From assembly GCF_001194135.2 (NCBI RefSeq), contig NC_068984.1, positions 32,957,090 to 33,005,323 of the forward strand: a stretch of 48,234 bases of DNA, in the 5' to 3' direction. Shown here piece by piece: positions 1 through 22,455 of the stretch (positions are counted from its first letter, which is position 1; the number at the start of each line of letters is the position of its first letter). The notes beneath the pieces are model-generated. The model was not told the DNA's origin. It saw nothing but the letters and a program-made list of their open reading frames with translations, and made no database searches. The stretch comes from Octopus bimaculoides. Taxonomy: Eukaryota. Made by a program: the position numbers and the translations under genes.

Positions 1-58
<58 letters not shown>
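1..58. repeat. (TA)n/(TG)n compound microsatellite
   Basis: Direct reading of the sequence. Confidence 0.95.
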
Positions 59-64
<6 letters not shown>

Positions 65-467
65 CCATGTATAAGTGTGTGTGCTTGAATGTATATGCAT
101 TGTGATAGTGTGTATATGTGTGTGTGTGTGGGAAGAGAGAAAATAAGTAAGATAGATAGATAGACTGATACATAGATAGATATGTACATATATGAACTAC
201 AAAACAGTTAGTGCAACGAAGACTGAGACACATAAAACAATTTTATTCCACGAAACAGTCCATATTCACTTTTGTCCTACCTTCACCAATGTCTCCAAAT
301 GAGTTACTTGTGAATTATCTGAGCAAATGCCAACACACAACTACCAATCTGCTGAATAAATATGATACGATTATTGTTCTTACACTATGATTTGGGCTTC
401 GTCTTCTTCTTGTTGTTCAGTTCGTCGTTTCTATTGTTGTTTCGGTTCATACTCTTGGTGTAATTGT

Positions 468-759
468 TTTTCTTCTGTACTATTTTTATTTTCTTTTGGC
501 TTTTCTATTTACAAACTTTTCATTTATCAGAGAAAGAATAAATATGAATGTACACTAAATACGAAAGGAAAAAATATTTGACCTATATACTCGTCCATGA
601 TTACAAGACACGATGCCAAATAAAAGCTGTAAATGGCCTGTTTCTCTTTATATATTTATTTTATATGTACGTACATAACTGTATGTGTAGACACACAGGC
701 GCACACTCATATATGTACACTATTCATGCACAACGCATATAGGACTATATGCAACGAAC

Positions 760-770
<11 letters not shown>
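468..770 (+). repeat. Segment A: ~300 bp sequence duplicated in direct orientation at 3705-4030
   Basis: ttttcttctgtactat...ttgacctatatactcgtcca(t/c)gattacaagacacgatgccaaataaaagctgtaaatggcctgtttctc...catgcacaacgcatata occurs at both loci. ORFs 548..742 and 3585..4043 share the peptide LTYILVHDYKTRCQIKAVNGLFL. Confidence 0.95.
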
Positions 771-823
<53 letters not shown>

Positions 824-1282
824 TGTGTATGTATGTGTATTATCTATGTATGTATGTGTATTATCTATGTATGTATGTATGTATGTATGTAAGTATGCAT
901 ACATACATATTAATATTTCTTCTTCTTCTTCTTCTTTTCATTTATTTATTTATTTCCCTATTTTTTTTTTTTCATTTCTCTCCTTAGTTTTTAAAGATGA
1001 TAATTGGTTGATTATTGCTGAAAAACCTGCCGAACCATCCAATTAGAGCCACAGTAAAATGGACAAAAGCAAGCAATCAGTAATTTTACTAAATATATTA
1101 TTAAGCCTTTTCAAAAGTAGCATATCGATTAGAAATTGTGTAATGATAAGGACTGTTTCTGTAGTGATAACAAGCAATGCCTTTAACATTGGATGTACAT
1201 ATCAATAAATGGAATACTGTATACTATGGACAATTCTTTGCCGTAAATAGAATTTATCTCTTTCTCTCTCTCCCCTCTCTCC

Positions 1283-1327
<45 letters not shown>

Positions 1328-1480
1328 NNNNNNNNNNNNNNNNNNNNNNNNNNNNNNNNNNNNNNNNNNNNNNNNNNNNNNNNNNNNNNNNNNNNNNNNN
1401 NNNNNNNNNNNNNNNNNNNNNNNNNNNNNNNNNNNNNNNNNNNNNNNNNNNNNNNNNNNNNNNNNNNNNNNNNNNNNNNN

Positions 1481-1539
<59 letters not shown>

Positions 1540-1616
1540 ATATATACATATTTATATGTTTATATTCATGAATATATATACATATAAGCACAAACACACA
1601 TACACACATATATATG

Positions 1617-2038
1617 TAGGGGCAAATGTGGTTGTGTGGTAAGATGATTGTTTCCCAACCATATGGTTCCCTGTTCAGTCCCACAGCGTGACACCATGAG
1701 CAAGTGTCTATTATAGCATAGGGATGACCAAACACGTGTTTGTGGATTCGACAGACTGAAATGGAAAGAACACCGCTGGATATATATGCTTAAGAGTGCG
1801 TGTGTGTCTATGTGTGTTTCTGCGCGTTTTGTTTTTGTAAAGCACACACCACCAGCAGCACCACCAGTTGACAACTGGTGTTGATGTGTTTACGTCCCCG
1901 TACGCTAGTAGGTCAGCAAAATACGTCCTAGTATTTGAAAATATGAAATAAGTATTGTGCGCGATTCATTCTACTGAAGTTCTTCAAAGAGTTGCTCCAG
2001 CATAACCGCAATCCAATGACTGAAACAAGTAAAAGATA
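1617..2038 (+). mobile_element. tRNA-derived SINE (family 1), near full length, diverged
   Basis: A-box-like tggttgtgtggtaag, B-box-like gttcagtcc, then ccatgagcaagtgtc, an internal (TG)-rich tract and tail gactgaaacaagtaaaaga. Homologous to the copy at 14726-15075. Confidence 0.8.
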
Positions 2039-3416
2039 TATATGCGCGTGCAGGTAATACTCATTCTTACTTCCACTCCCTTTTCTCCCTTCGTTTTATC
2101 TCTCACCTTTTCTCTGTCGTCATATAGTTGTCAAATCGTCAAGAGTGGAGGGAGCGCTAAAAATTCCAGCGAATATCTTTTTGGATCAAACGTGGTAAAC
2201 TAAATTGTCCGTCGAAAGCCATTTTAGTCCACGTAAATTTACTTTCCGCTGTCAATTCAATTTGTAAATCCAAAGTTCAAACACCGAATAAATTTAATAG
2301 AAGGTCATAGAATATAGTAGAAAAAGACAGCAGAATAGAGAATTATGCATTATTTAATCAGCTAAGCATGTTTCAGTTAGATTGGTAAATTCCAAATTTG
2401 TGATGCAGTAATCATTCACGTAAGTCTATCTCATATTTCAACGAGCAAGATTCTACAGTTGTAGAAAAATTACACACCTTCTCATCCTTATCAAGGCTAT
2501 ACCACACTATGAAAGAGTGAACATTTTCAAGATGATAGATAAAAAAAAATAATATCTTTCGACTAGTATAATAGGTAGAGAGCTATCTTAGCTGATGAGA
2601 CATCGGTAATTGCCCCATATGCAAACTGGTTAGTGTAATTAATATGTAGACTAGAATTATATAGCGCAACATCAATTCTGTATACTCCTGTAAAGTACTT
2701 CATGTTAAATTTGCGGTTTTGAAATAGTGGTCTCATTAAAATCAATTTATGAATTTTAGAAGAGAAATTCGTATCTGAGATTTCAAAGAGAAATTTCGTA
2801 AAACCAGACCAAACAGTTAACATTCTTTTATGAATGGATCCATTTGTAAAGCCAACATATTCAGTGCTTTGCCAGTGTAGAAGAAACAATCAATCTTACT
2901 AAACTTCTCCCAAAACTTTCGTTGCTAGGCTTTTAGATGGTAGCATATATTCATTAGCAATTTTGATACCAGCATCTGATCTTTTTGGTGCATTAGTGAA
3001 GAATACAGTGTCGCAAGCCTCTTTCTCACGTTTCCAGCTCGCAAAACTCTTGAATTGTGTGTGTGTGTGTGTGCATGTGATTTTTTTTTCATACTACTCT
3101 TAGTTTGGTGCTGCTTATCATTGTCTATGTAATGGAAGCAGCTTTAGAAATAGATACTTAACGGGTATGAACCTGTTGCTTTGTAATATAAATATTAAGG
3201 TAAAGTACGATGTGTAGTCAAAACATATCCGATCGTGATTTCTTTTTCGGACAAAATAATAATGCATGAGCAAAATCCGCATGGGTGTTAGGTGGCGGCG
3301 TTCTTTCTGAGCATGCGTAAACATTTTCGTGGCGGTAGGTTGCGCCATTCGCCCGCAGTGACGCGTTGAGTACTGACGAGAAGATTGTACTGTGCGATTT
3401 TTCTTTTTAAGTCAAG

Positions 3417-4695
3417 ATGAACGAGTGCATTCAGTGATACTGTATCCAATTCTGCCAAAAACTTGGTGATACACAAGCCCAGATTATGGAGAAGATTAAG
3501 AAGGCCTTTGGAGATGATGCTATGGGAAAACACAAATAAAGGGGTGGTACAAACAATTCAAAGATGTCCGCACCTTAGTGGACAGTGAGCCACGTTATGG
3601 CCAGACAATTAACAAAGAATAGTACCTGGGGATTCTTCGTCCTCCACGTGAAGCTGTGCGGCGACGACAACCCGACCTGTGGGCAGCCAAGAACTGACAA
3701 CTCATTTTCTTCTGTACTATTTCTTTTGGCTTTTCTATTTACAAACTTTCCATTTATCAGAGAAAGAATAAATATGAATGTACACGAAAGGAAAATACGA
3801 AAAGAAAAATACGAAAGGAAAAAAAAATTGACCTATATACTCGTCCACGATTACAAGACACGATGCCAAATAAAAGCTGTAAATGGCCTGTTTCTCGTTA
3901 TATATTTATTTTATATGTACGTACACATCTGTATATGTGTAGACTCACAAGCGCACACTCATATATGTACACGTATTCATGCACAACGCATATATGACTA
4001 TATGCAACAATCTATGTGCATATATGTATATATTTTTTGCTGACCTACTAAGGCACGGGGACGTAGACACATCAACACCGGTTGTCAAGTGCTGGTGTTG
4101 GTGGTGGGTATCTTACACAAACAAAACACACACAATCACACATACGCACCCCCCCCCACACGCGCGCGCACTCAGGAGCATATATATTCGGTGTTCATCT
4201 TTCCATTTCAGTCTATCGAGTCCACTTACAAGTGTTTGGTCATCCCTATGCTATAGCAGACACTTGCTCATGGTGTCACGCTGTGGGACTGAACACGGAA
4301 CCAAATGCTTGGGAAGCAAACATCTTAACACACAGCCACATTTGCCCCTATATATATGTGTATGTATGTGTGTTTGTGTTCATATGTGTTCATATGAATA
4401 TACATGGCAACGCACCCACACATTCCACCCTCGTCGTCCAAGCATTCCTCGTGAAGCAAAACACACCACTTGCTTGCCAGGCTTTCTACTACCCAGACTC
4501 GGCTTCAAGTGACTTTTGGCTTTTCCCAAAGCTCAAAAAAAAAAAAAAAACTCTCTAAGGGAGAAAATTTGAGTAAACAGAAGACATGAAGCAAAATTGG
4601 ACGGCACAGCTCTACACCACCTCAAAATCCAGCAGTGGCAGGAACGCTGGCAGAAGTGTGTAGACTCCCAAGGCGAATGTTTTGAATGAAACTAA
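3417..4695 (+). pseudogene. Disrupted mariner (DD34D-type) transposase
   Basis: Manual translation: MNECIQ*YCIQFCQKLGDTQAQIMEKIKKAFGDDAMG(fs)QIKGWYKQFKDVRTLVDSEPRYG (N-terminal HTH); GQTINKE*YLGILR..REAVRRRQPDLWAAKN*QL; after the insert, HGNAPTHS (HDNA motif), YYPDSASSDFWLFPKLK (YSPDLAP.DF motif), QQWQERWQKCVDSQGECFE*N*. Confidence 0.9.
3705..4402. repeat. Insert within the mariner: copy of 468-770 (direct) fused to a copy of ~1557-1923 (inverted)
   Basis: 3705-4030 matches segment A; 4034-4402 is the reverse complement of the SINE plus 5' flank at 1557-1923. The insert separates transposase codons QL from HGNA. Confidence 0.9.
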
Positions 4696-6166
4696 ATCAA
4701 AATGGCGAGTTATTTTGATATTACTTGTGTGTATTTTTTGGGGCGGGGGTGGGGGGCAAAGGTCGGATACTTTTTGACAACACCTCGTACATAACTCTGT
4801 CTACGTTCGTAAAAAAATATTAACAATAAAATATAACTGAAACTTATTAAGAATCAGCGCTTTCTATTTCAATAAAAAAGAAGTGACCATATGTTATTGT
4901 TCATGAAAAACTTTAAGCATGAATATTGGTTATATTTGTAACTGTGCTAGTTTATTGTCTGTATATGAAATTAACATCGTCTAACTGTCAAGTGTCTTAG
5001 AATAAGTGGCAAGTGGAAAAAGTAGGTCTGCTTTGAGTCTGTAAATAACGTGACATCTCTTTAATTAGAACAATAACGAACTCGAACACTCCGTATCTTC
5101 TGCTCTACTCTATAAATACTTTGTGCCTGGAGAAGAAAAAATAATATTCCGTTCTCTGTACGTTATATACCCACGTAATTAATTGTATTTAGACTTTTCC
5201 GGTGTCGACTTTGCATTAATGTTTAGGAGAAATTTATACAGGTCCATGTTCATTAATTAAAACACAGTTTCGTCTAAGCGTTACAGATATTATTTAACTA
5301 ACGTCTATATCGTGAGTTTGGGAGTAGAGGTAATCGCTAGAGAAGGTATCTATTTCTAAAGCCACTTTCATTTAACAGACGTCACCATTAATATACGCCA
5401 TTAATATTATCATCCTTTTATATTCTTCATCACCGGATACCGAAGAGATGTCTTTTATAGTCAGTGTGATAATATTAAATAGAACGGCAAACAATACATT
5501 TGAAACCATTGGAAATCAAATAGAGACATGAATTTGTAATCAATAAAGACCTGAGCAAAGATCTTTCTTAATTGACCTCATATCGATTGCTATAGTTCTT
5601 AGCAGCTGTAGATTAATGTTTGGCTTTTTCATCTTAGTACCATATTAAAATATGTTTGAAGACACGAAAACAGTAACAGGCCATTGCAATTGTTTCTACT
5701 CTTAAATGTGTAATTCTACACATCACTATTTGAAGAGACACAATTCATACGAATTGAGGAAACATACAATACTAAATTGAATGACAAGTGTAGAGATAGT
5801 ATTATAGCTAGATGTTCACAAACACTACTTTATCATGAAATATTCGCGCACATACTATTACTCACAAATATAGACTCGCATACACACATATACACATATG
5901 TAATATATTTTTTTATATGTTTCTTTCTACGTAAGATTACTAATGATATGTAAGAATAAGGTGAACGGAGTAAAGTCTGATCGAAAGAGAGAACTAAACA
6001 AAAAGTATATGTGCGTGTTTAGTTGCTTCGCATTATGTCCAAAACGTAACCTAGGCAACTGTTAGAGAACGGCTACATATATATATATAAGCACAATCGA
6101 ATGAAACACTGGAAGGCATTGCCCCGCTAGGCGTCCACTGACAGGACCATATGAAAGTAAGAAAGA

Positions 6167-6234
<68 letters not shown>

Positions 6235-8960: not shown

Positions 8961-10156
8961 CATCGACTCACGTGATAGGGCATTGTAATTACTGTCATAA
9001 AGATAGTGAGCCATGACTAATTCCCTCGAGTGTGTTTGTGTGTGAGACTTAAAGTATTGGGATTGCATAGAAAAAAATCACTGCCGGAACAAATAGCTAC
9101 AATATATCTGAATATCAAAGTGGTTTTCATTCGCTCTACCGCCACATCTAAAAACAGATTGCCCGCCAACATATTACACACGCAATCTCTCAGACATGTC
9201 TAAGTATGTGCATACAAATTCTAAATTATAGTGGTGTCTACATACATACATATTCTCGTATATATATACATATATAAATACATACTCACACACACACAAC
9301 ATACACAAGCATACACACACTTGCACATATGTATGGTTATATGTGTGTGTGAGTATATATATATATATATATNNNNNNNNNNNNNNNNNNNNNNNNNNNN
9401 NNNNNNNNNNNNNNNNNNNNNNNNNNNNNNNNNNNNNNNNNNNNNNNNNNNNNNNNNNNNNNNNNNNNNNNNNNNNNNNNNNNNNNNNNNNNNNNNNNNN
9501 NNNNNNNNNNNNNNNNNNNNNNNNNNNNNNNNNNNNNNNNNNNNNNNNNNNNNNNNNNNNNNNNNNNNNNNNNNNNNNNNNNNNNNNNNNNNNNNNNNNN
9601 NNNNNNNNNNNNNNNNNNNNNNNNNNNNNNNNNNNNNNNNNNNNNNNNNNNNNNNNNNNNNNNNNNNNNNNNNNNNNNNNNNNNNNNNNNNNNNNNNNNN
9701 NNNNNNNNNNNNNNNNNNNNNNNNNNNNNNNNNNNNNNNNNNNNNNNNNNNNNNNNNNNNNNNNNNNNNNNNNNNNNNNNNNNNNNNNNNNNNNNNNNNN
9801 NNNNNNNNNNNNNNNNNNNNNNNNNNNNNNNNNNNNNNNNNNNNNNNNNNNNNNNNNNNNNNNNNNNNNNNNNNNNNNNNNNNNNNNNNNNNNNNNNNNN
9901 NNNNNNNNNNNNNNNNNNNNNNNNNNNNNNNNNNNNNNNNNNNNNNNNNNNNNNNNNNNNNNNNNNNNNNNNNNNNNNNNNNNNNNNNNNNNNNNNNNNN
10001 NNNNNNNNNNNNNNNNNNNNNNNNNNNNNNNNNNNNNNNNNNNNNNNNNNNNNNNNNNNNNNNNNNNNNNNNNNNNNNNNNNNNNNNNNNNNNNNNNNNN
10101 NNNNNNNNNNNNNNNNNNNNNNNNNNNNNNNNNNNNNNNNNNNNNNNNNNNNNNNN

Positions 10157-10212
<56 letters not shown>

Positions 10213-12640: not shown

Positions 12641-12710
12641 GCAGTGTGGTATCGAACCTGGCCTCAAGATGGTGAAGGAAACTTCTTACCCACTCCGCCA
12701 TATCTGTGCC
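12641..12710 (-). mobile_element. SINE family 1 head fragment
   Basis: Reverse complement ggcacagatatggcggagtgggtaagaagtttcc...ggttcgataccacactgc has A/B-box-like motifs similar to 14726. Confidence 0.5.
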
Positions 12711-13200
12711 TTACCTTCTTAGATATGAGTGTGTGAGTGTACGTATATGTGTGTCTGTAACTGTATTAGTATGTGTAGGTTTATTACGAAGGCGGCGCAT
12801 TTCGAAAAAGAGACTGGAAATGGGAAAATTCTTTTCGTGGGTGATGTATATTCCTTCTTCGAAATTACATAACTGAATTGATTCAACTTTCAAAGAGACA
12901 GAATTACAGAATTACAAGTAAACATCTTTTATTTATTTTATGACTTTTATTTTCTGGCTACTGCCAATTCGATCGTCTTGTTTCCAAATGAATATAACTA
13001 GAACTTTTGCGTAATTAAAGTGTTATCTCTGGCTAATACCTCAGTACGGCTCTTATATTTTCTTTTATTTTTCGCATCAGTCGAATGAAGGAAACGAAAA
13101 TCTCTGTTCTTTATCCTGCTGCACGCACGTTTAGTTCGGTGCTTTATGTTACTGAAGATGGTGTAATTAAAACACGCCATTTTGGCTGATAACCAACAGT

Positions 13201-13852: not shown

Positions 13853-14693
13853 CGTTCACGTGTATGTGCGTGTGAATGGGCGTACGTGTGTATATGAATG
13901 TGTATGTGTGTGTATGCATAGTCATACAAACGCGCATACACGCACACACNNNNNNNNNNNNNNNNNNNNNNNNNNNNNNNNNNNNNNNNNNNNNNNNNNN
14001 NNNNNNNNNNNNNNNNNNNNNNNNNNNNNNNNNNNNNNNNNNNNNNNNNNNNNNNNNNNNNNNNNNNNNNNNNNNNNNNNNNNNNNNNNNNNNNNNNNNN
14101 NNNNNNNNNNNNNNNNNNNNNNNNNNNNNNNNNNNNNNNNNNNNNNNNNNNNNNNNNNNNNNNNNNNNNNNNNNNNNNNNNNNNNNNNNNNNNNNNNNNN
14201 NNNNNNNNNNNNNNNNNNNNNNNNNNNNNNNNNNNNNNNNNNNNNNNNNNNNNNNNNNNNNNNNNNNNNNNNNNNNNNNNNNNNNNNNNNNNNNNNNNNN
14301 NNNNNNNNNNNNNNNNNNNNNNNNNNNNNNNNNNNNNNNNNNNNNNNNNNNNNNNNNNNNNNNNNNNNNNNNNNNNNNNNNNNNNNNNNNNNNNNNNNNN
14401 NNNNNNNNNNNNNNNNNNNNNNNNNNNNNNNNNNNNNNNNNNNNNNNNNNNNNNNNNNNNNNNNNNNNNNNNNNNNNNNNNNNNNNNNNNNNNNNNNNNN
14501 NNNNNNNNNNNNNNNNNNNNNNNNNNNNNNNNNNNNNNNNNNNNNNNNNNNNNNNNNNNNNNNNNNNNNNNNNNNNNNNNNNNNNNNNNNNNNNNNNNNN
14601 NNNNNNNNNNNNNNNNNNNNNNNNNNNNNNNNNNNNNNNNNNNNNNNNNNNNNNNNNNNNNNNNNNNNNNNNNNNNNNNNNNNNNNNNNNNNN

Positions 14694-14725: not shown

Positions 14726-15075
14726 GCGCAGGCGTGGCTGTGTGGTGTAAGAACTTTGCTTCACCACCACATGGCTCCGGTTTGTCTCACTGCATGGCAC
14801 CTTGGGCAAGTGTCCTCTAGTATAGTCTCGGGTCGACCAAATCCTCGCCAGACGTTTTGGTAGATGAAAACTGAAAGAAGCCTCTGTGTGTATCTCTGTC
14901 GATGTGTGAGTCTGTCTCTGCGTCTGTGTTAGCGAATCGGCAAAATGCCCGATCGAATAAGTACTCGGTTTACAAGAAATAAGTGCTAGTGCCGATTTGT
15001 TCGACTAAAACTCTTCAATGCGGTACTCCATCATGGCAGCAGTTGAATGACTAAAAGAAGTAAAAGAAGAAAAGA
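14726..15075 (+). mobile_element. tRNA-derived SINE (family 1)
   Basis: gcgcaggcgtggctgtgtggt..aagaac, ggcaccttgggcaagtgtc, ggtagatgaaaactgaaagaagcc, tail gactaaaagaagtaaaaga. Confidence 0.85.
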
Positions 15076-18344: not shown

Positions 18345-19154
18345 TTGCAAGAGAAAGCAGAGGTTATTAAAAAATACCAGAAAGATATCATTCATAGATC
18401 TCCTAGAATAGGAAATGAGTCGAAAACAAAATCAATACTATATAAGCCACAATACCCTTCCTCGGGTGAAATAGAAAAATGTCTGGAAGAAATATGGTCT
18501 TACATTGTTTATATCTGCCGAGGAAGGCAATATGGAACTATGGTCGCTATCTGCAGCAACGAAGGGAAAGTGCAAAGGATGGCAACAGTGACCTGCTTCT
18601 CAGACTAGTTCCCAATACTCACTTTATACATGGGACGTCGAACGACCAAGATCCATGCTAGAGGAGCGCGGGTAGATAATAAATGTAACAAGCCCCCAAC
18701 AAAACAACACAAGACTGTGTATGGAGTTCTAAGGTTTGATATACCATGACACACCAGATTCTCTCTGCTTCGGAGAGTGCAAGCAGATGCATGTGGTCAT
18801 GGAGGGTCGAAAACGGAGATGTTATATTTGTGGCAAAACTGATCACCTAAAAGCTTTCTGCCTTACTTTTGAAGAAATCGCTGCACCACTATTCCCAACG
18901 CATTTCATTGCAATCCCAAAGAGCAAAGCAGCGGCATCTGCCACGACTAGCACTAAAACAGATAGAAAATGGCCAACGAAAATCTTGCTGACTCCTCGGA
19001 TAATGAATGGGCGTCGGGGCAAGACAAAATCATCCGAGGGGGGGGATCATCGAGCGATCCCCCGCCAAAAGAAAGAAAAAGAGTGAGAGCGGGTGAAAAT
19101 ACACATGTAACCCCTAAATCCAAAAGGTTTGTGGGTACGAAGCTGAACCTATAA
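18345..19154 (+). pseudogene. LINE ORF1 (gag-like, zinc knuckle) remnant
   Basis: Frames 18345-18608 (EIEKCLEEIWSYIVYICRGRQYG), 18736-19086 (CX2CX4HX4C) and 18969-19154 (S/K/R-rich tail). Confidence 0.75.
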
Positions 19155-19199
19155 ACATGGCACCTCAACTCGAAAGGAAAGAAAATGACATGCTAGTGA

Positions 19200-21140
19200 T
19201 AAGGATGGTATATAACCCATTTCTTCGACGTGAAACACGAAGGTTGTATTGTCCGAGCTAGTGTTGCGTGTTCTGAAACAACACGGCAACAATCTAGAAT
19301 TCGGTTTGTGACGGACCATATCGGCCGTGTGCTCTCCGATTTGAAAGAGATTTGCATGATGTTTCGGCAGCACTTCACCGACCTCTTTTCCAGGAGTGAT
19401 ACACTTGAGACAACGGGCTCTCAGGACTTCCGTGATGGTATGCCACGCAAGTCAGGCAAGGAGATTGTGCGATGCGACATGGCAATTTCAGTGGTGCAAA
19501 TTGCAGAAATACTCAGCCGCTGCTTGGAACGCAATCCACCAGGATTGGATGGTCTCGCCTATGAGTTATTTATACACATGTCCGATTTATTTGCTCCGGT
19601 TTTGACAGCCGTTTAGAGCACCTGTAAACAAACTGTGGGCATTCCCAGTTGTATGAGTCGAGGAATGGTAACTCTGCTGAGGAAGGACCCGAACAAGGGT
19701 GACAGGGTTGAAAACGACAGATCTGTAACTCTACTCAGCACTGAGTTAAAGGTTTTAGCTGGAGTACTGGCTAAGATACTGGCGCTTGTTGTCCATATTG
19801 TCGGTGGGGGGGATGCACAAATCTCTGAGATCTCTGGTAGGTTTATCCACAACAACCTCAACTTCACACGATACATCGTAGAGCAGATCTAGATTTGGAG
19901 GGGCACTGGTCAATTTGGACCAGTATAAGGTATGTGACAGAGGGTCATCGCTATCTGGTGGCTGTCTTAAAAACTGTCGGCTTCGGTACTGTCATCAGAG
20001 GCTAAATCACCAAAATATATAGTAGCATCTGCTCGGTCGTCAAATTAAATGGCCACCCACCAAAACCCTTCAGTATTGAAATCTTTCTTCAATACTGATG
20101 TCTCTTCTCCCTGTTTTATATGTTTTGTCACTAGAACATTTGCTGCGAAGACTCAAGAAATTGAGGTGCATTCTGCTGGAATTAGGCCACAGGGGTGTCT
20201 GACTCTTCGGATGCAGGAATGTTTGACACTATACTGAAAAATATCAAGTATATATAAGAGTACATATGAAGCAGGTAAATCGGTGGAATTTCAACTAGGC
20301 TTTTGGAGAGGGAAATCCATGTTGACTATCGGCGATTTCTATCGCTGGGCGGAGGGACAGTGAAAGTGCTCAGAGTCTGGTTCGGACCAAATCTCCAGGT
20401 AGATAAGAACTGCGAAGAGGTCATTGTCAGGGTGGCCAAGCTCAGCCAGAAAAAGGCAGAATGAATGTTGCTTCTAAACGGCCAGGCGAAAATAGCGAAT
20501 GCATACATCGATTCGGTAGTGTAGTATCTCCCCTGGCCATCGCAACTTGTCCGAAGAAAACTGGAGCACTTGCTTTTTCGATTTTTATTAAAGGGTCAGG
20601 TCCCGCTGGTTAAAATGCACTCCGTGGTGGTCTTGGGGTGCCATCCTTGATGATGCGGTGCCACGTGTTGACGCTGACGCACCTGCAGAAATATGTAAAT
20701 ATGTTTGAAGGTGTGAACACGGTGACGAAGACAAGGATGAATTGTGCGGAGGTCCATCGTGTGACATGACTTTCTGCAGCTCATCTCATTGACGGAGCTG
20801 TAGTCATGGGTCGAACGTAGACCAATATTAGGTGCTTAATGTTGCCAGGCGCTCACTGCATTGTACCAGGTAGACAAAACACATGGCGTGAAAACAACCC
20901 AATATTTCTATACGGGGCTAGTTGAGGGTATAAGCAACGACGGCCTAGGATTGACTCTGGGCATCAACGACGGCCTAGGATTGACTCTGGGCATCAACGA
21001 GATTAATCTCTGTGGTCTCTTCGGGTGGATTTTTTCTGTCTGAGAAACAAGGTCCATCACCAGAAGTCTCCAGTATAGCAGTGCTATAAGGTTGCATTGC
21101 TTGTTCGAGACAAGCTCTCTAGGCAAGGAAGTGCCAAAAG
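19200..21140 (+). pseudogene. LINE ORF2 reverse transcriptase remnant, no recognisable APE endonuclease
   Basis: ORF track 19230..19616 and 19635..19892 plus manual translation downstream to the start of the C-terminal zinc-binding region. Confidence 0.85.
20935..21000 (+). repeat. Perfect 30 bp tandem duplication (2.2 copies)
   Basis: caacgacggcctaggattgactctgggcat x2 plus caacga. Confidence 0.97.
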
Positions 21141-22157: not shown

Positions 22158-22455
22158 GGCACCTACTATGATAGGAATTGTTTCTGTTTTTAGATTCCAC
22201 ATTCGAGTTATCTCTATTTCCAGGTCTTTGTATTTTGAAAGTTTTTCCATTTCTTTTAGAGAAACGTTGTCATCTGCTGGTATTGAAACATCAATTAGAA
22301 GGCATTTTTTTCCTTCATGATCTTTGACAACTATATCTGGTCTATTTGCCTTAATTTCTCTATCTGTGTGTATTGGCATATCCCAGAGTATGGTTGCTTT
22401 CTCGTTTTCTGTGACCTTTTCTGGCGTGTGTTTATACCATCTTTTTTCTGTTGCT
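22158..22455 (-). mobile_element. R4/Dong-like retrotransposon, restriction-like endonuclease domain, 5'-truncated; 3' end lost in gap
   Basis: TEKRWYKHTPEKVTENEKATILWDMPIHTDREIKANRPDIVVKDHEGKKCLLIDVSIPADDNVSLKEMEKLSKYKDLEIEITRMWNLKTETIPIIVGA: uninterrupted PD..D..K RLE motif. (TAA)n at 22458-22497 directly 5' on the element strand. Confidence 0.9.

What the first reader, a model, noticed from the sequence alone, without database searches (positions are those of the whole stretch)
3206..4789. Mariner transposon carrying a two-part insert copied from its own upstream flank
Seen: both TIRs and TA ends are intact, but between codons QL (3704) and HGNA (4403) the transposase contains ~700 bp of non-element DNA. 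The first part (3705-4030) is a direct copy of 468-770. The second (4034-4402) is an inverted copy of ~1557-1923. The inverted SINE copy shares private variants with the 1617 SINE (ggggcaaatgtgg, cacagcgtgacaccatgagc, atagcatagggatgaccaaacac, gactgaaatggaaaga, tagtaggtcagcaaaa) that the family member at 14726 lacks, so the donor is this locus and not the family at large. Inference: a break inside the element was repaired by synthesis with two template switches onto neighbouring DNA (abortive gap repair / FoSTeS-like), giving a Pack-mariner-like unit that a trans-acting transposase could still mobilise.
Basis: partly seen in the sequence, partly recalled or inferred. Interest (0 to 1): 0.75.

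Follow-up and report, generated by a model that had tools for sequence, protein, structure and literature searches.

The report
Dead mariner that captured neighbouring DNA
An old, broken mariner transposon in an octopus genome carries a 699-bp filler copied in two pieces (one flipped) from DNA 1.3-3.2 kb upstream of it. This is a clear but ordinary example of the break-repair "sequence capture" already catalogued in hundreds of animal transposons.

Summary
Window 3206-4789 is a TA-flanked, Mos1-like mariner relic. A 699-bp block (3704-4402) sits between codons QL and H(G)NAP, where relatives read QLHHDNAP without a break.

The block has two parts:
- 3705-4033 is a direct copy of 468-780.
- 4035-4402 is an inverted copy of 1561-1921. 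That donor is 58 bp of 5' flank plus the first ~300 bp of a ~420-bp SINE.

Against 11 other copies of the SINE family (window, O. bimaculoides, O. sinensis, Argonauta, one Logan contig), the two local copies are sisters: 300/300 bootstraps, 88% identical to each other versus at most 75% to any other copy, with many shared derived states and indels. The insert copy lacks the SINE 3' end, so it was not retroposed.

The best explanation is a break inside an already old element, patched by copying nearby DNA with one internal template switch. This is a single-copy "Pack-TIR" made by transposition-independent gap filling (Tan et al. 2021 list 115 TcMariner cases).

Not supported:
- the "abortive gap repair after excision" label, because only 3 bp of element were lost at the site;
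- present mobilisability, because the left TIR is decayed, the catalytic core is deleted and no second copy was found.

Genome-wide copy number of segment A is untested. Verdict: a new member of a known kind, of low to moderate interest.

The parts
3206..3207 (.). Left TA target-site dinucleotide of the mariner
   Evidence: Sequence. Other family copies also have TA before CGAGGTG.
3208..3236 (+). Left terminal inverted repeat, decayed (CGATGTGTAGTCAAAACATATCCGATC...)
   Evidence: Including the TA, the ends match at 24 of 29 positions. There are 4-5 changes from the family consensus TACGAGGTGTWGTCAAAAAGTATCCGACC, derived from L001, L002 and L003.
3208..3703 (+). Mariner left arm: 5' UTR, HTH N-terminus (FCQKLGD...WYKQFKD...EPRYG), then, after an internal deletion, TINKE*YLGIL...WAAKN*QL. 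Stops and frameshifts are present.
   Evidence: Translations, Mos1 alignment, homologues, DNA matches to L001 and L002.
3599..3606 (+). Junction of an older ~460-bp internal deletion (about aa 63 to 218 of the transposase), lying in a 7-8 bp microhomology GGC(C)AGAC
   Evidence: Window 3591 to 3599 corresponds to L003 9591 to 10058. The deletion is not shared by the L001 or L002 copies.
3704..3704 (+). Orphan base A at junction 1; it matches neither the element (C expected) nor the donor (T)
   Evidence: Junction print-out.
3705..4033 (+). Filler part A: direct copy of 468-780. It ends about 10 bp into a TA run and contains a private 14-bp tandem triplication (3784-3822).
4035..4402 (-). Filler part B': inverted copy of 1561-1921, i.e. 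58 bp of SINE 5' flank plus SINE positions 1 to ~303. The last ~115 bp of the SINE are absent.
4403..4787 (+). Mariner right arm: HGNAPTHSTLVVQAFLVKQNTPLACQAFYYPDSASSDFWLFPKL... to the right TIR (4759-4787). The second catalytic D reads G.
4788..4789 (.). Right TA dinucleotide
468..780 (+). Donor of part A. It is unannotated AT-rich DNA and its right edge runs into (TA)30.
   Evidence: No other copy was found in the window or in about 100 kb of other loci (about 62 kb of it octopod). There was no protein-level relative.
1561..1921 (+). Donor of part B'. Its left edge lies inside a degenerate TA/TG array (1481-1586).
1619..2036 (+). Full-length old SINE (tRNA-like head, internal TA/TG tract, conserved ...GACTGAAACAAGTAAAAGA tail). 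Candidate 8-bp target-site duplication TATATATG at 1609-1616 and 2037-2044.
   Evidence: Alignment with family copies; element ends.
760..1586 (.). Microsatellite-rich interval, not copied, that separates the two donors: (TA)n/(TATG)n at 760-897, (TC)n at 1257-1327, N gap at 1328-1480, (TA)n(TG)n at 1481-1586
   Evidence: gap list.

Best explanation
A mariner inserted at a TA and decayed. Long afterwards the relic suffered a break, or a stalled or collapsed fork, between the codons for L and HH of the transposase remnant. The break was patched by copying nearby DNA rather than by simple rejoining.

Proposed path:
1. One end primed synthesis on the region ~2.9-3.2 kb upstream and copied 468 rightwards until it entered a (TA)n array at ~775-780.
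2. It switched, at a 2-3 bp TAT overlap, to the opposite strand ~1.8 kb upstream of the break, at position 1921 inside an old SINE.
3. It copied leftwards through the SINE head and 58 bp of its flank, until it entered the degenerate TA/TG array at ~1561.
4. It was then joined back to the element 3 bp from where it left.

The result is a single-copy 'Pack-mariner', that is, a Pack-TIR produced by transposition-independent gap filling, with a two-part direct-plus-inverted filler.

Shown: the structure, the local origin of both parts, and the near-absence of element loss.
Inferred: that synthesis rather than ligation of fragments was used, the direction of synthesis, that both parts came in one event, and that the dinucleotide arrays acted as stop points.
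For: 1. Both filler parts match only the upstream flank (E 3e-116 and 5e-101). Nothing else in 1-6234 is duplicated.
2. SINE sisterhood. In a 7-copy alignment there are 37 shared-derived positions against 16 flank-only and 15 insert-only, of 243 columns. A 3-bp deletion and a ~10-bp insertion are also shared. In a 13-copy alignment of the SINE head there are 19 shared-derived positions against 8 and 6, of 133 columns. The local pair is 88% identical, and at most 75% to any of 11 other copies. No other copy carries more than 4 of the 19 local states. NJ bootstrap support is 300/300 in both data sets.
3. The insert copy carries the donor's 5' flank. That flank is the best-scoring match among 16,166 tiles, though only narrowly. 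The insert copy also lacks the SINE 3' end. This is the opposite of what retroposition produces.
4. The donor SINE is complete and has a candidate target-site duplication, so the direction of copying is flank to element.
5. Only one His codon of the element is missing.
6. Both inner donor boundaries fall inside dinucleotide arrays.
7. The pattern matches the published class: cis bias mostly under 5 kb, microhomology with a median of 2 bp at one or more breakpoints, a gap with a median of 4.6% of the TE, old inactive elements, and 115 TcMariner cases (PMC8277862).
8. Rough dating. The filler and its donors differ by 4-10%, or 2-5% per lineage. The SINE had already accumulated about 15% change before the copy was made. 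Mariner copies differ from each other by 16-20%. The capture is therefore much younger than the SINE insertion and probably younger than the mariner insertion.
Against: - No reads or second assembly could be examined. The window is a gap-rich scaffold with 10 N runs.
- Segment A's donor is on another contig, so its orientation and distance depend on scaffolding.
- Genome-wide copy number of segment A and of the three junctions is unknown. Only about 62 kb of other octopod DNA (about 100 kb of other loci in all) could be searched.
- The outer junctions show no microhomology. This fits end-joining as well as template switching.
- Part B is about twice as diverged from its donor as part A (9.7% v 4.2%, Fisher p = 0.019, not CpG-driven). 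A single event does not predict this.
- The shared 5' flank is low-complexity sequence (score 39 v 30 for the next best tile; 33 v 30 once 6 SINE bases in the query are discounted).
Confidence: 0.75

Rival explanations
1. Excision-coupled abortive gap repair. The element excised, the gap was re-copied from the sister chromatid from both ends, and synthesis wandered onto flanking DNA before rejoining.
For: - The same element carries a ~460-bp internal deletion with 7-8 bp of microhomology only 95-105 bp to the left of the filler. That is the classic product of this pathway (Rubin & Levy 1997, as cited in PMC4678618).
- One multi-switch event could in principle have produced both the deletion and the filler.
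Against: - At the filler itself only 3 bp of element are missing. The model predicts large deletions with breakpoints biased towards the ends (PMC8277862).
- The filler looks several per cent younger than the divergence among mariner copies.
- There is no evidence that the deletion and the filler arose together.
Confidence: 0.1
2. Non-replicative capture. Two loose DNA fragments from the neighbourhood (sister chromatid or homologue) were ligated into a double-strand break by end joining.
For: There is 0 bp of microhomology and one orphan base at junction 1, 0 bp at junction 3, and two extra T at junction 2. These are end-joining-like signatures.
Against: - Both sources are still in place, so the fragments would have to come from another chromatid.
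- Both pieces end inside dinucleotide arrays. That is more easily explained by polymerase stalling.
- 4-10% later divergence may have erased short microhomologies.
Confidence: 0.08
3. Assembly artefact: a chimeric contig or a misplaced repeat copy in a short-read scaffold.
For: The window has 10 N gaps, all next to microsatellites. Junction 2 lies in a TA run. Junction-spanning ORFs are not on record elsewhere.
Against: - The copies differ from their donors by 4-14% and have private indels and tandem duplications, so they are not collapsed or duplicated reads.
- Junctions 1 and 3 join unrelated unique sequences with no shared k-mer.
- Removing the insert restores the transposase reading frame to within one codon. 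A chimera would not do that.
Confidence: 0.04
4. Independent insertions. A SINE of a local subfamily retroposed into the mariner, and an unrelated repeat 'A' landed beside it. The resemblance to the flank would then reflect family membership.
For: SINEs make up about 12% of Octopus genomes (PMC13282606). Only 11 other copies were available for comparison.
Against: - The insert SINE is truncated at its 3' end and carries donor flank.
- There is no target-site duplication or tail at the insert ends.
- Sister grouping is 300/300.
- A has no other copy in the data.
- Both partners would have to lie within 3.2 kb by coincidence.
Confidence: 0.03

Closest known systems
Single-copy Pack-TIRs (Pack-TcMariner) made by transposition-independent gap filling (Tan et al. 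2021, Nat Commun, PMC8277862)
   Same: - Both TIR ends of a decayed TcMariner element enclose foreign DNA whose parental copy lies under 5 kb away on the same chromosome.
- Element loss at the site is tiny.
- Short microhomology is present at one breakpoint.
- There is no sign of later transposition, and the capture appears to be later than the element's insertion.
   Different: - The filler has two parts, one inverted.
- Half of it is itself a repeat (a SINE plus its flank) rather than unique host or genic DNA.
- The host is a cephalopod; no Octopus or mollusc is named in the paper or in its held supplementary files.
- The outgroup 'empty' element could not be shown here.
Abortive gap repair / filler DNA in Ac-Ds and internally deleted mariners (Rubin & Levy 1997, cited in PMC4678618; Ds filler DNA in PMC3260210)
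   Same: Foreign filler lies between transposon ends. The neighbouring ~460-bp deletion with 7-8 bp of microhomology looks like this pathway.
   Different: At the filler only 3 bp of the element are lost, and there is no evidence that excision triggered the break.
FoSTeS/MMBIR complex rearrangements (own knowledge: Lee, Carvalho & Lupski 2007; Hastings et al. 2009), and the FoSTeST variant of PMC8277862
   Same: Short templated segments from nearby DNA are inserted in direct and inverted orientation, with serial template switches.
   Different: Microhomology is seen at only one of three junctions. The scale is sub-kilobase. There is no accompanying copy-number change of the flanks beyond the copied pieces, and no subsequent transposition step.
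Pack-MULE / Pack-TYPE (including plant Pack-mariner) elements (PMC8903248, PMC6379663)
   Same: The architecture is TIR - captured DNA - TIR.
   Different: Those are typically multi-copy, mobilisable and carry gene fragments. This one appears single-copy, carries no recognisable gene fragment, and has a decayed TIR.
Ordinary nested TE insertion (a SINE retroposed into a DNA transposon)
   Same: A SINE sequence lies inside a mariner.
   Different: The SINE lacks its 3' end, has no target-site duplication or tail at the insert ends, brings its donor's flank with it, and is fused to a second non-SINE segment.

Membership tests
mariner (Tc1/mariner superfamily) element | TA target-site duplication flanking the element | tested here: met
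   TA is at 3206-3207 and 4788-4789. TA also precedes the TIR in L001, L002 and L003 copies.
mariner (Tc1/mariner superfamily) element | Terminal inverted repeats of about 28-30 bp | tested here: met
   The ends match at 24 of 29 positions. The right TIR is close to the family consensus; the left has 4-5 changes.
mariner (Tc1/mariner superfamily) element | Encodes a Mos1-type transposase (HTH plus DD34D catalytic domain) | tested here: inconclusive
   Homology is clear (Mos1 E 4e-12; Pfam HTH_48 and Transposase_1 in relatives). However, about 155 aa including the first D are deleted, the second D reads G, and there are several stops. It is a relic, not a functional gene.
Pack-TIR (Tan et al. 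2021) | Both TE termini retained, with an internal non-element sequence | tested here: met
   699 bp at 3704-4402 is absent from the relatives that retain this part of the element, L003 and L004.
Pack-TIR (Tan et al. 2021) | An identifiable parental copy of the internal sequence elsewhere in the genome | tested here: met
   468-780 and 1561-1921. The direction of copying is fixed for B by the complete donor SINE.
Pack-TIR (Tan et al. 2021) | Captured sequence is non-TE host DNA | tested here: inconclusive
   Part A has no repeat or protein relatives in the data. Part B is mostly an old SINE copy plus 58 bp of flank.
Gap-filling origin (transposition-independent) | Cis bias, a small gap in the TE, and the element pre-existing without the filler in outgroups | tested here: inconclusive
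   Cis bias is met (donors 1.3-2.7 kb from the element) and the small gap is met (3 bp). The outgroup or orthologous empty element could not be tested, because no DNA search of Octopus genomes was available.
FoSTeS/MMBIR | Microhomology at every template-switch junction | tested here: not met
   Junction 1 has 0 bp plus an orphan A. Junction 2 has 2-3 bp (TAT) plus two extra T. Junction 3 has 0 bp. Later divergence of 4-10% may hide short overlaps.
Abortive gap repair after excision | A large internal deletion whose breakpoints coincide with the filler | tested here: not met
   Only one codon is lost at the filler. The 460-bp deletion lies 95-105 bp away.
SINE retroposition (for the insert copy) | Complete 3' end or tail, target-site duplication, and a flank unrelated to other copies | tested here: not met
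   The copy is truncated at about position 303 of 420, has no duplication at the insert ends, and shares the donor's 5' flank.
Active non-autonomous (MITE-like / mobilisable Pack) element | Additional transposed copies with their own TA duplications | not testable with these tools
   No whole-genome DNA search or reads were available. None was seen in about 62 kb of other octopod DNA, about 100 kb of other loci in all. Junction ORFs are not on record.

The most novel reading that the evidence does not exclude
The ~460-bp deletion and the two-part filler record one multi-switch repair episode with four switches, in which hairpin-prone (TA)n arrays terminated each synthesis tract. Alternatively, or in addition, the composite was mobilised or is co-transcribed with the upstream SINE, so that the 236-369-nt inverted SINE pair about 2.1-2.4 kb apart forms a long dsRNA. 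That would be a possible ADAR substrate in a lineage known for heavy RNA editing.
Probability: 0.07. Interest if true: 0.5.

Novelty: new member of a known kind. Interest (0 to 1): 0.3.

Why it matters
This locus is a well-resolved natural record of how a break in 'junk' DNA is patched by copying nearby sequence.
- It has two templated tracts, one inverted, and each stops at a dinucleotide array.
- It extends the animal Pack-TIR / gap-filling phenomenon to a cephalopod, a lineage not named in the published 100-genome survey.
- It creates an inverted SINE pair.

It does not reveal a new mechanism, gene or mobile family. Its main practical value is as a caution for repeat annotation, because a 'SINE nested in a mariner' here is not a retroposition. 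It could also serve as a dated marker if the orthologous locus is compared among Octopus species.

Tried and rejected
No runs could be found and read laying could not be used, so there is no read-level check of the junctions and no depth-based copy number.
- Exact look-ups of junction-spanning ORFs (3979-4512 and 3585-4043) found nothing on record.
- A protein search with the SINE-plus-mariner ORF 4082-4555 gave no hits.
- A full HMMER scan with the junction-1-plus-A ORF hit only one protein, through the out-of-frame mariner part, and nothing for segment A. This is a weak negative, because octopus repeats are barely represented in those protein sets.
- A six-sequence SINE peptide profile found only 2 proteins. 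These were used to fetch extra outgroup loci L005 and L006.
- Rfam gave only sub-threshold mir-297/466-type hits on TA/TG microsatellites. ARAGORN found no tRNA, so the SINE head is too decayed to be recognised.
- A first NJ bootstrap that counted terminal gaps as characters broke the sister pair (2/300). This was an artefact of the truncated sequences. Pairwise-deletion distances give 300/300.
- Searches for a target-site duplication or inverted ends around the 699-bp block, as expected for a transposing insert, found none.
- CpG decay as the cause of B's higher divergence was rejected: at most 1 of 10 transitions is in CpG context.
- Rubin & Levy 1997 (PMC232480) is not held. It is cited only through PMC4678618.
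Full report
WHAT IS THERE

The window is AT-rich (35% GC), microsatellite-laden scaffold sequence with ten N gaps. Its repeats identify an octopod:
- The mariner family matches copies in O. bimaculoides (L001, GCA_001194135.2; 84% identity) and O. sinensis (L002; 80%).
- The SINE family matches copies in both species, in Argonauta hians, and in one Logan contig.
The exact species was not determined.

THE ELEMENT

TA dinucleotides lie at 3206-3207 and 4788-4789. They flank terminal repeats that match each other at 24 of 29 positions. Four other family copies show the same TA plus CGAGGTGT(T/A)GTCAAAAAGTATCCGACC ends. Against that consensus the window's right end is nearly intact and the left end has 4-5 changes.

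The conceptual protein aligns with Mos1 transposase residues 206-342 (E 4e-12) and with mariner transposases carrying Pfam HTH_48 and Transposase_1. It is a relic:
- It has several stops and frameshifts.
- The second catalytic D reads G.
- About 460 bp (roughly aa 63-218) are missing. Window 3591 to 3599 corresponds to L003 9591 to 10058.
- The deletion junction at 3599-3606 lies in a 7-8 bp GGC(C)AGAC microhomology and is not shared by the L001 or L002 copies.

THE INSERT

The left arm ends with codon CTC (Leu, 3701-3703) and the right arm resumes with CAT (His, 4403). Relatives read WAAKNFQLHHDNAPAH. L003 and L004 read CAG CTY CAC CAY GAY AAT at the site. L003 has 19 bp where the window has 715 bp. 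The window therefore has 699 bp of foreign DNA (3704-4402) and lacks one His codon. There is no target-site duplication and there are no inverted ends around the block.

ORIGIN OF THE INSERT

Self-BLAST, the repeat finder and global alignments agree:
- 3705-4033 is a direct copy of 468-780 (E 3e-116).
- 4035-4402 is an inverted copy of 1561-1921 (E 5e-101).
- Base 3704 (A) and two extra T at 4034-4035 are unassigned.
Nothing else in 1-6234 is duplicated, either in the window or in the first four fetched loci.

The upstream SINE runs from ~1619 to 2036, with a candidate TATATATG target-site duplication (1609-1616 and 2037-2044). The insert holds only its first ~303 bp, preceded by 58 bp of its 5' flank. 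A 3'-truncated copy carrying the donor's flank is not a product of retroposition. Because the flank copy is the complete one, copying went from flank to element.

ARE THE TWO SINE COPIES SISTERS?

Seven full copies were aligned:
- 37 positions where the two local copies share a state that differs from a clear consensus of the others;
- 16 flank-only and 15 insert-only positions, of 243 columns;
- a shared 3-bp deletion and a shared ~10-bp insertion.

Thirteen copies of the SINE head were aligned, with 11 outgroups from four sources:
- 19 shared-derived positions against 8 and 6, of 133 columns;
- 88% identity within the pair, and at most 75% to any other copy;
- no outgroup carries more than 4 of the 19 local states.

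NJ with pairwise deletion groups the pair in 300/300 bootstraps in both data sets. An earlier run that scored terminal gaps was an artefact.

The shared 5' flank is the best of 16,166 tiles, but only narrowly (score 39 against 30 for the next; 33 against 30 once 6 SINE bases in the query are discounted). It is low-complexity sequence, so it is supporting evidence only. The sample of family copies is small, so a genome-wide tree is still desirable.

IS SEGMENT A A DISPERSED REPEAT?

No other copy was found in 44 kb of window sequence, about 40 kb of Octopus loci or 20 kb of Argonauta. No protein-level relative was found among 1.84 billion representative proteins. This excludes a SINE-like copy number but not a mid-repetitive family.

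JUNCTIONS AND TRACT ENDS

- Junction 1 (element to A): 0 bp of microhomology plus an orphan A.
- Junction 2 (A to B'): a 2-3 bp TAT overlap inside A's terminal TA run, plus two extra T.
- Junction 3 (B' to element): 0 bp.

In donor coordinates, A's copy stops about 10-20 bp into the (TA)30 array at 760-820. B's copy stops at 1561, inside the degenerate TA/TG array at 1481-1586. Both tracts therefore end at the borders of the same uncopied microsatellite-rich interval, approached from opposite sides. If synthesis ran left to right in the composite, each tract stopped on entering a hairpin-prone dinucleotide array. That is an inference.

TIMING (ROUGH)

- Filler against donor mismatches are 4.2% for A (12/286) and 9.7% for B head plus tail (22/226), or 2-5% per lineage.
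- Using the scale in PMC13282606 (JC 0.065 ≈ 18 My, 0.09 ≈ 25 My), this is roughly 6-14 My.
- The SINE had already diverged about 15% from its family before being copied.
- Mariner copies differ by 16-20%. This is near the ~25-My TIR burst reported for O. vulgaris.
- The capture therefore probably happened in an already old, inactive element.
- The two-fold difference between A and B (Fisher p = 0.019, not CpG-driven) is unexplained. Possible causes are rate heterogeneity, later gene conversion between the direct A copies, or two events.

MECHANISM

The best-supported reading (confidence 0.75) is a break or fork collapse inside the relic, repaired by copying nearby DNA with one internal strand-switching template change. 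The product is a single-copy Pack-mariner.

This is the pattern Tan et al. 2021 documented for 370 animal Pack-TIRs, 115 of them TcMariner:
- parental copies mostly under 5 kb away;
- microhomology with a median of 2 bp at one or more breakpoints in 68% of cases;
- gaps with a median of 4.6% of the element;
- origin long after insertion, independent of transposition.
Octopus and molluscs are not named in the paper or its held supplements.

The rivals are:
- excision-coupled abortive gap repair (0.10), disfavoured because only 3 bp are lost at the filler, although the nearby 460-bp deletion is of that type;
- ligation of loose fragments (0.08);
- misassembly (0.04), disfavoured by 4-14% divergence, private indels and the restored reading frame;
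- independent insertions (0.03).

MOBILISABILITY

There is no evidence that the unit can be mobilised. The left TIR is decayed, internal sequence is deleted, and no second copy of any junction was found. From own knowledge, and from the title of Lohe & Hartl 2002 in the reference list of PMC4678618, mariner mobilisation is sensitive to internal sequences and to element size.

VERDICT

It is a new member of a known kind. Interest is 0.3.

Noticed in passing
window 3591-3606: The mariner has a separate ~460-bp internal deletion (about aa 63-218, removing the first catalytic D). Its junction lies in a 7-8 bp GGC(C)AGAC microhomology. The deletion is 95-105 bp left of the filler and is not shared by the O. 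bimaculoides or O. sinensis copies.
   Followed up: partly
window 1572-1807 versus 4160-4395 (also 1849-1921 versus 4035-4107): The capture created an inverted SINE pair, 236 nt at 86% complementarity plus 73 nt at 88%, about 2.1-2.4 kb apart. If co-transcribed it could fold into long dsRNA. Transcription was not checked.
   Followed up: no
window 468-760 / 3705-4013 versus 1617-1921 / 4035-4343: Part A differs from its donor by 4.2% but part B by 9.7% (Fisher p = 0.019). The excess is not in CpG context. This is unexplained if both parts were copied in one event.
   Followed up: partly
window 3784-3822 and 4375-4396: There are private tandem duplications inside the filler that are absent from the donors: about 2.9 copies of a 14-bp unit ACGAAAGGAAAAT in part A, and 2.2 copies of TGTGTTCATA in the flank portion of part B'.
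   Followed up: yes
window 14734-15067: A third copy of the same SINE family, 66-69% identical to the two local copies, abuts the N gap at 13950-14693 through a (TA)n run.
   Followed up: yes
window gaps at 1328, 6235, 9373, 10870, 13950, 16222, 21407, 25430, 26689, 37283: Of the ten N runs (4,152 N in all), those whose flanks were read (1328-1480 in sequence; about six others through ORF translations) are bordered by TA, TG or TC microsatellites, as expected for a short-read scaffold breaking at simple repeats. Order and orientation across the gaps rest on scaffolding.
   Followed up: partly
window 18736-19616 (+) and 22160-22379 (-): These are retroelement-like ORF fragments. 19230-19613 weakly resembles the region between the endonuclease and reverse transcriptase of LINE-1 ORF2 (E 0.08-0.2 against PDB). 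The 22379-22160 ORF (…RPDIVVKDHEGKKCLLIDVSIPADDN…) looks like the C-terminal part of a non-LTR retrotransposon ORF (own recollection, not tested).
   Followed up: partly
L002 (O. sinensis) 9772-10170 and 14123-14328: A related mariner copy there is split by about 4 kb that contains an integrase (rve) gene at 12700-13170. This looks like an ordinary nested LTR-retroelement insertion, in contrast to the templated filler in the window.
   Followed up: no
window 13-75, 842-907, 1480-1617, 4352-4435: Rfam E-value hits to mir-297, mir-466, mir-3149 and similar families are all far below gathering scores. They sit on TA/TG microsatellites and are low-complexity artefacts.
   Followed up: yes
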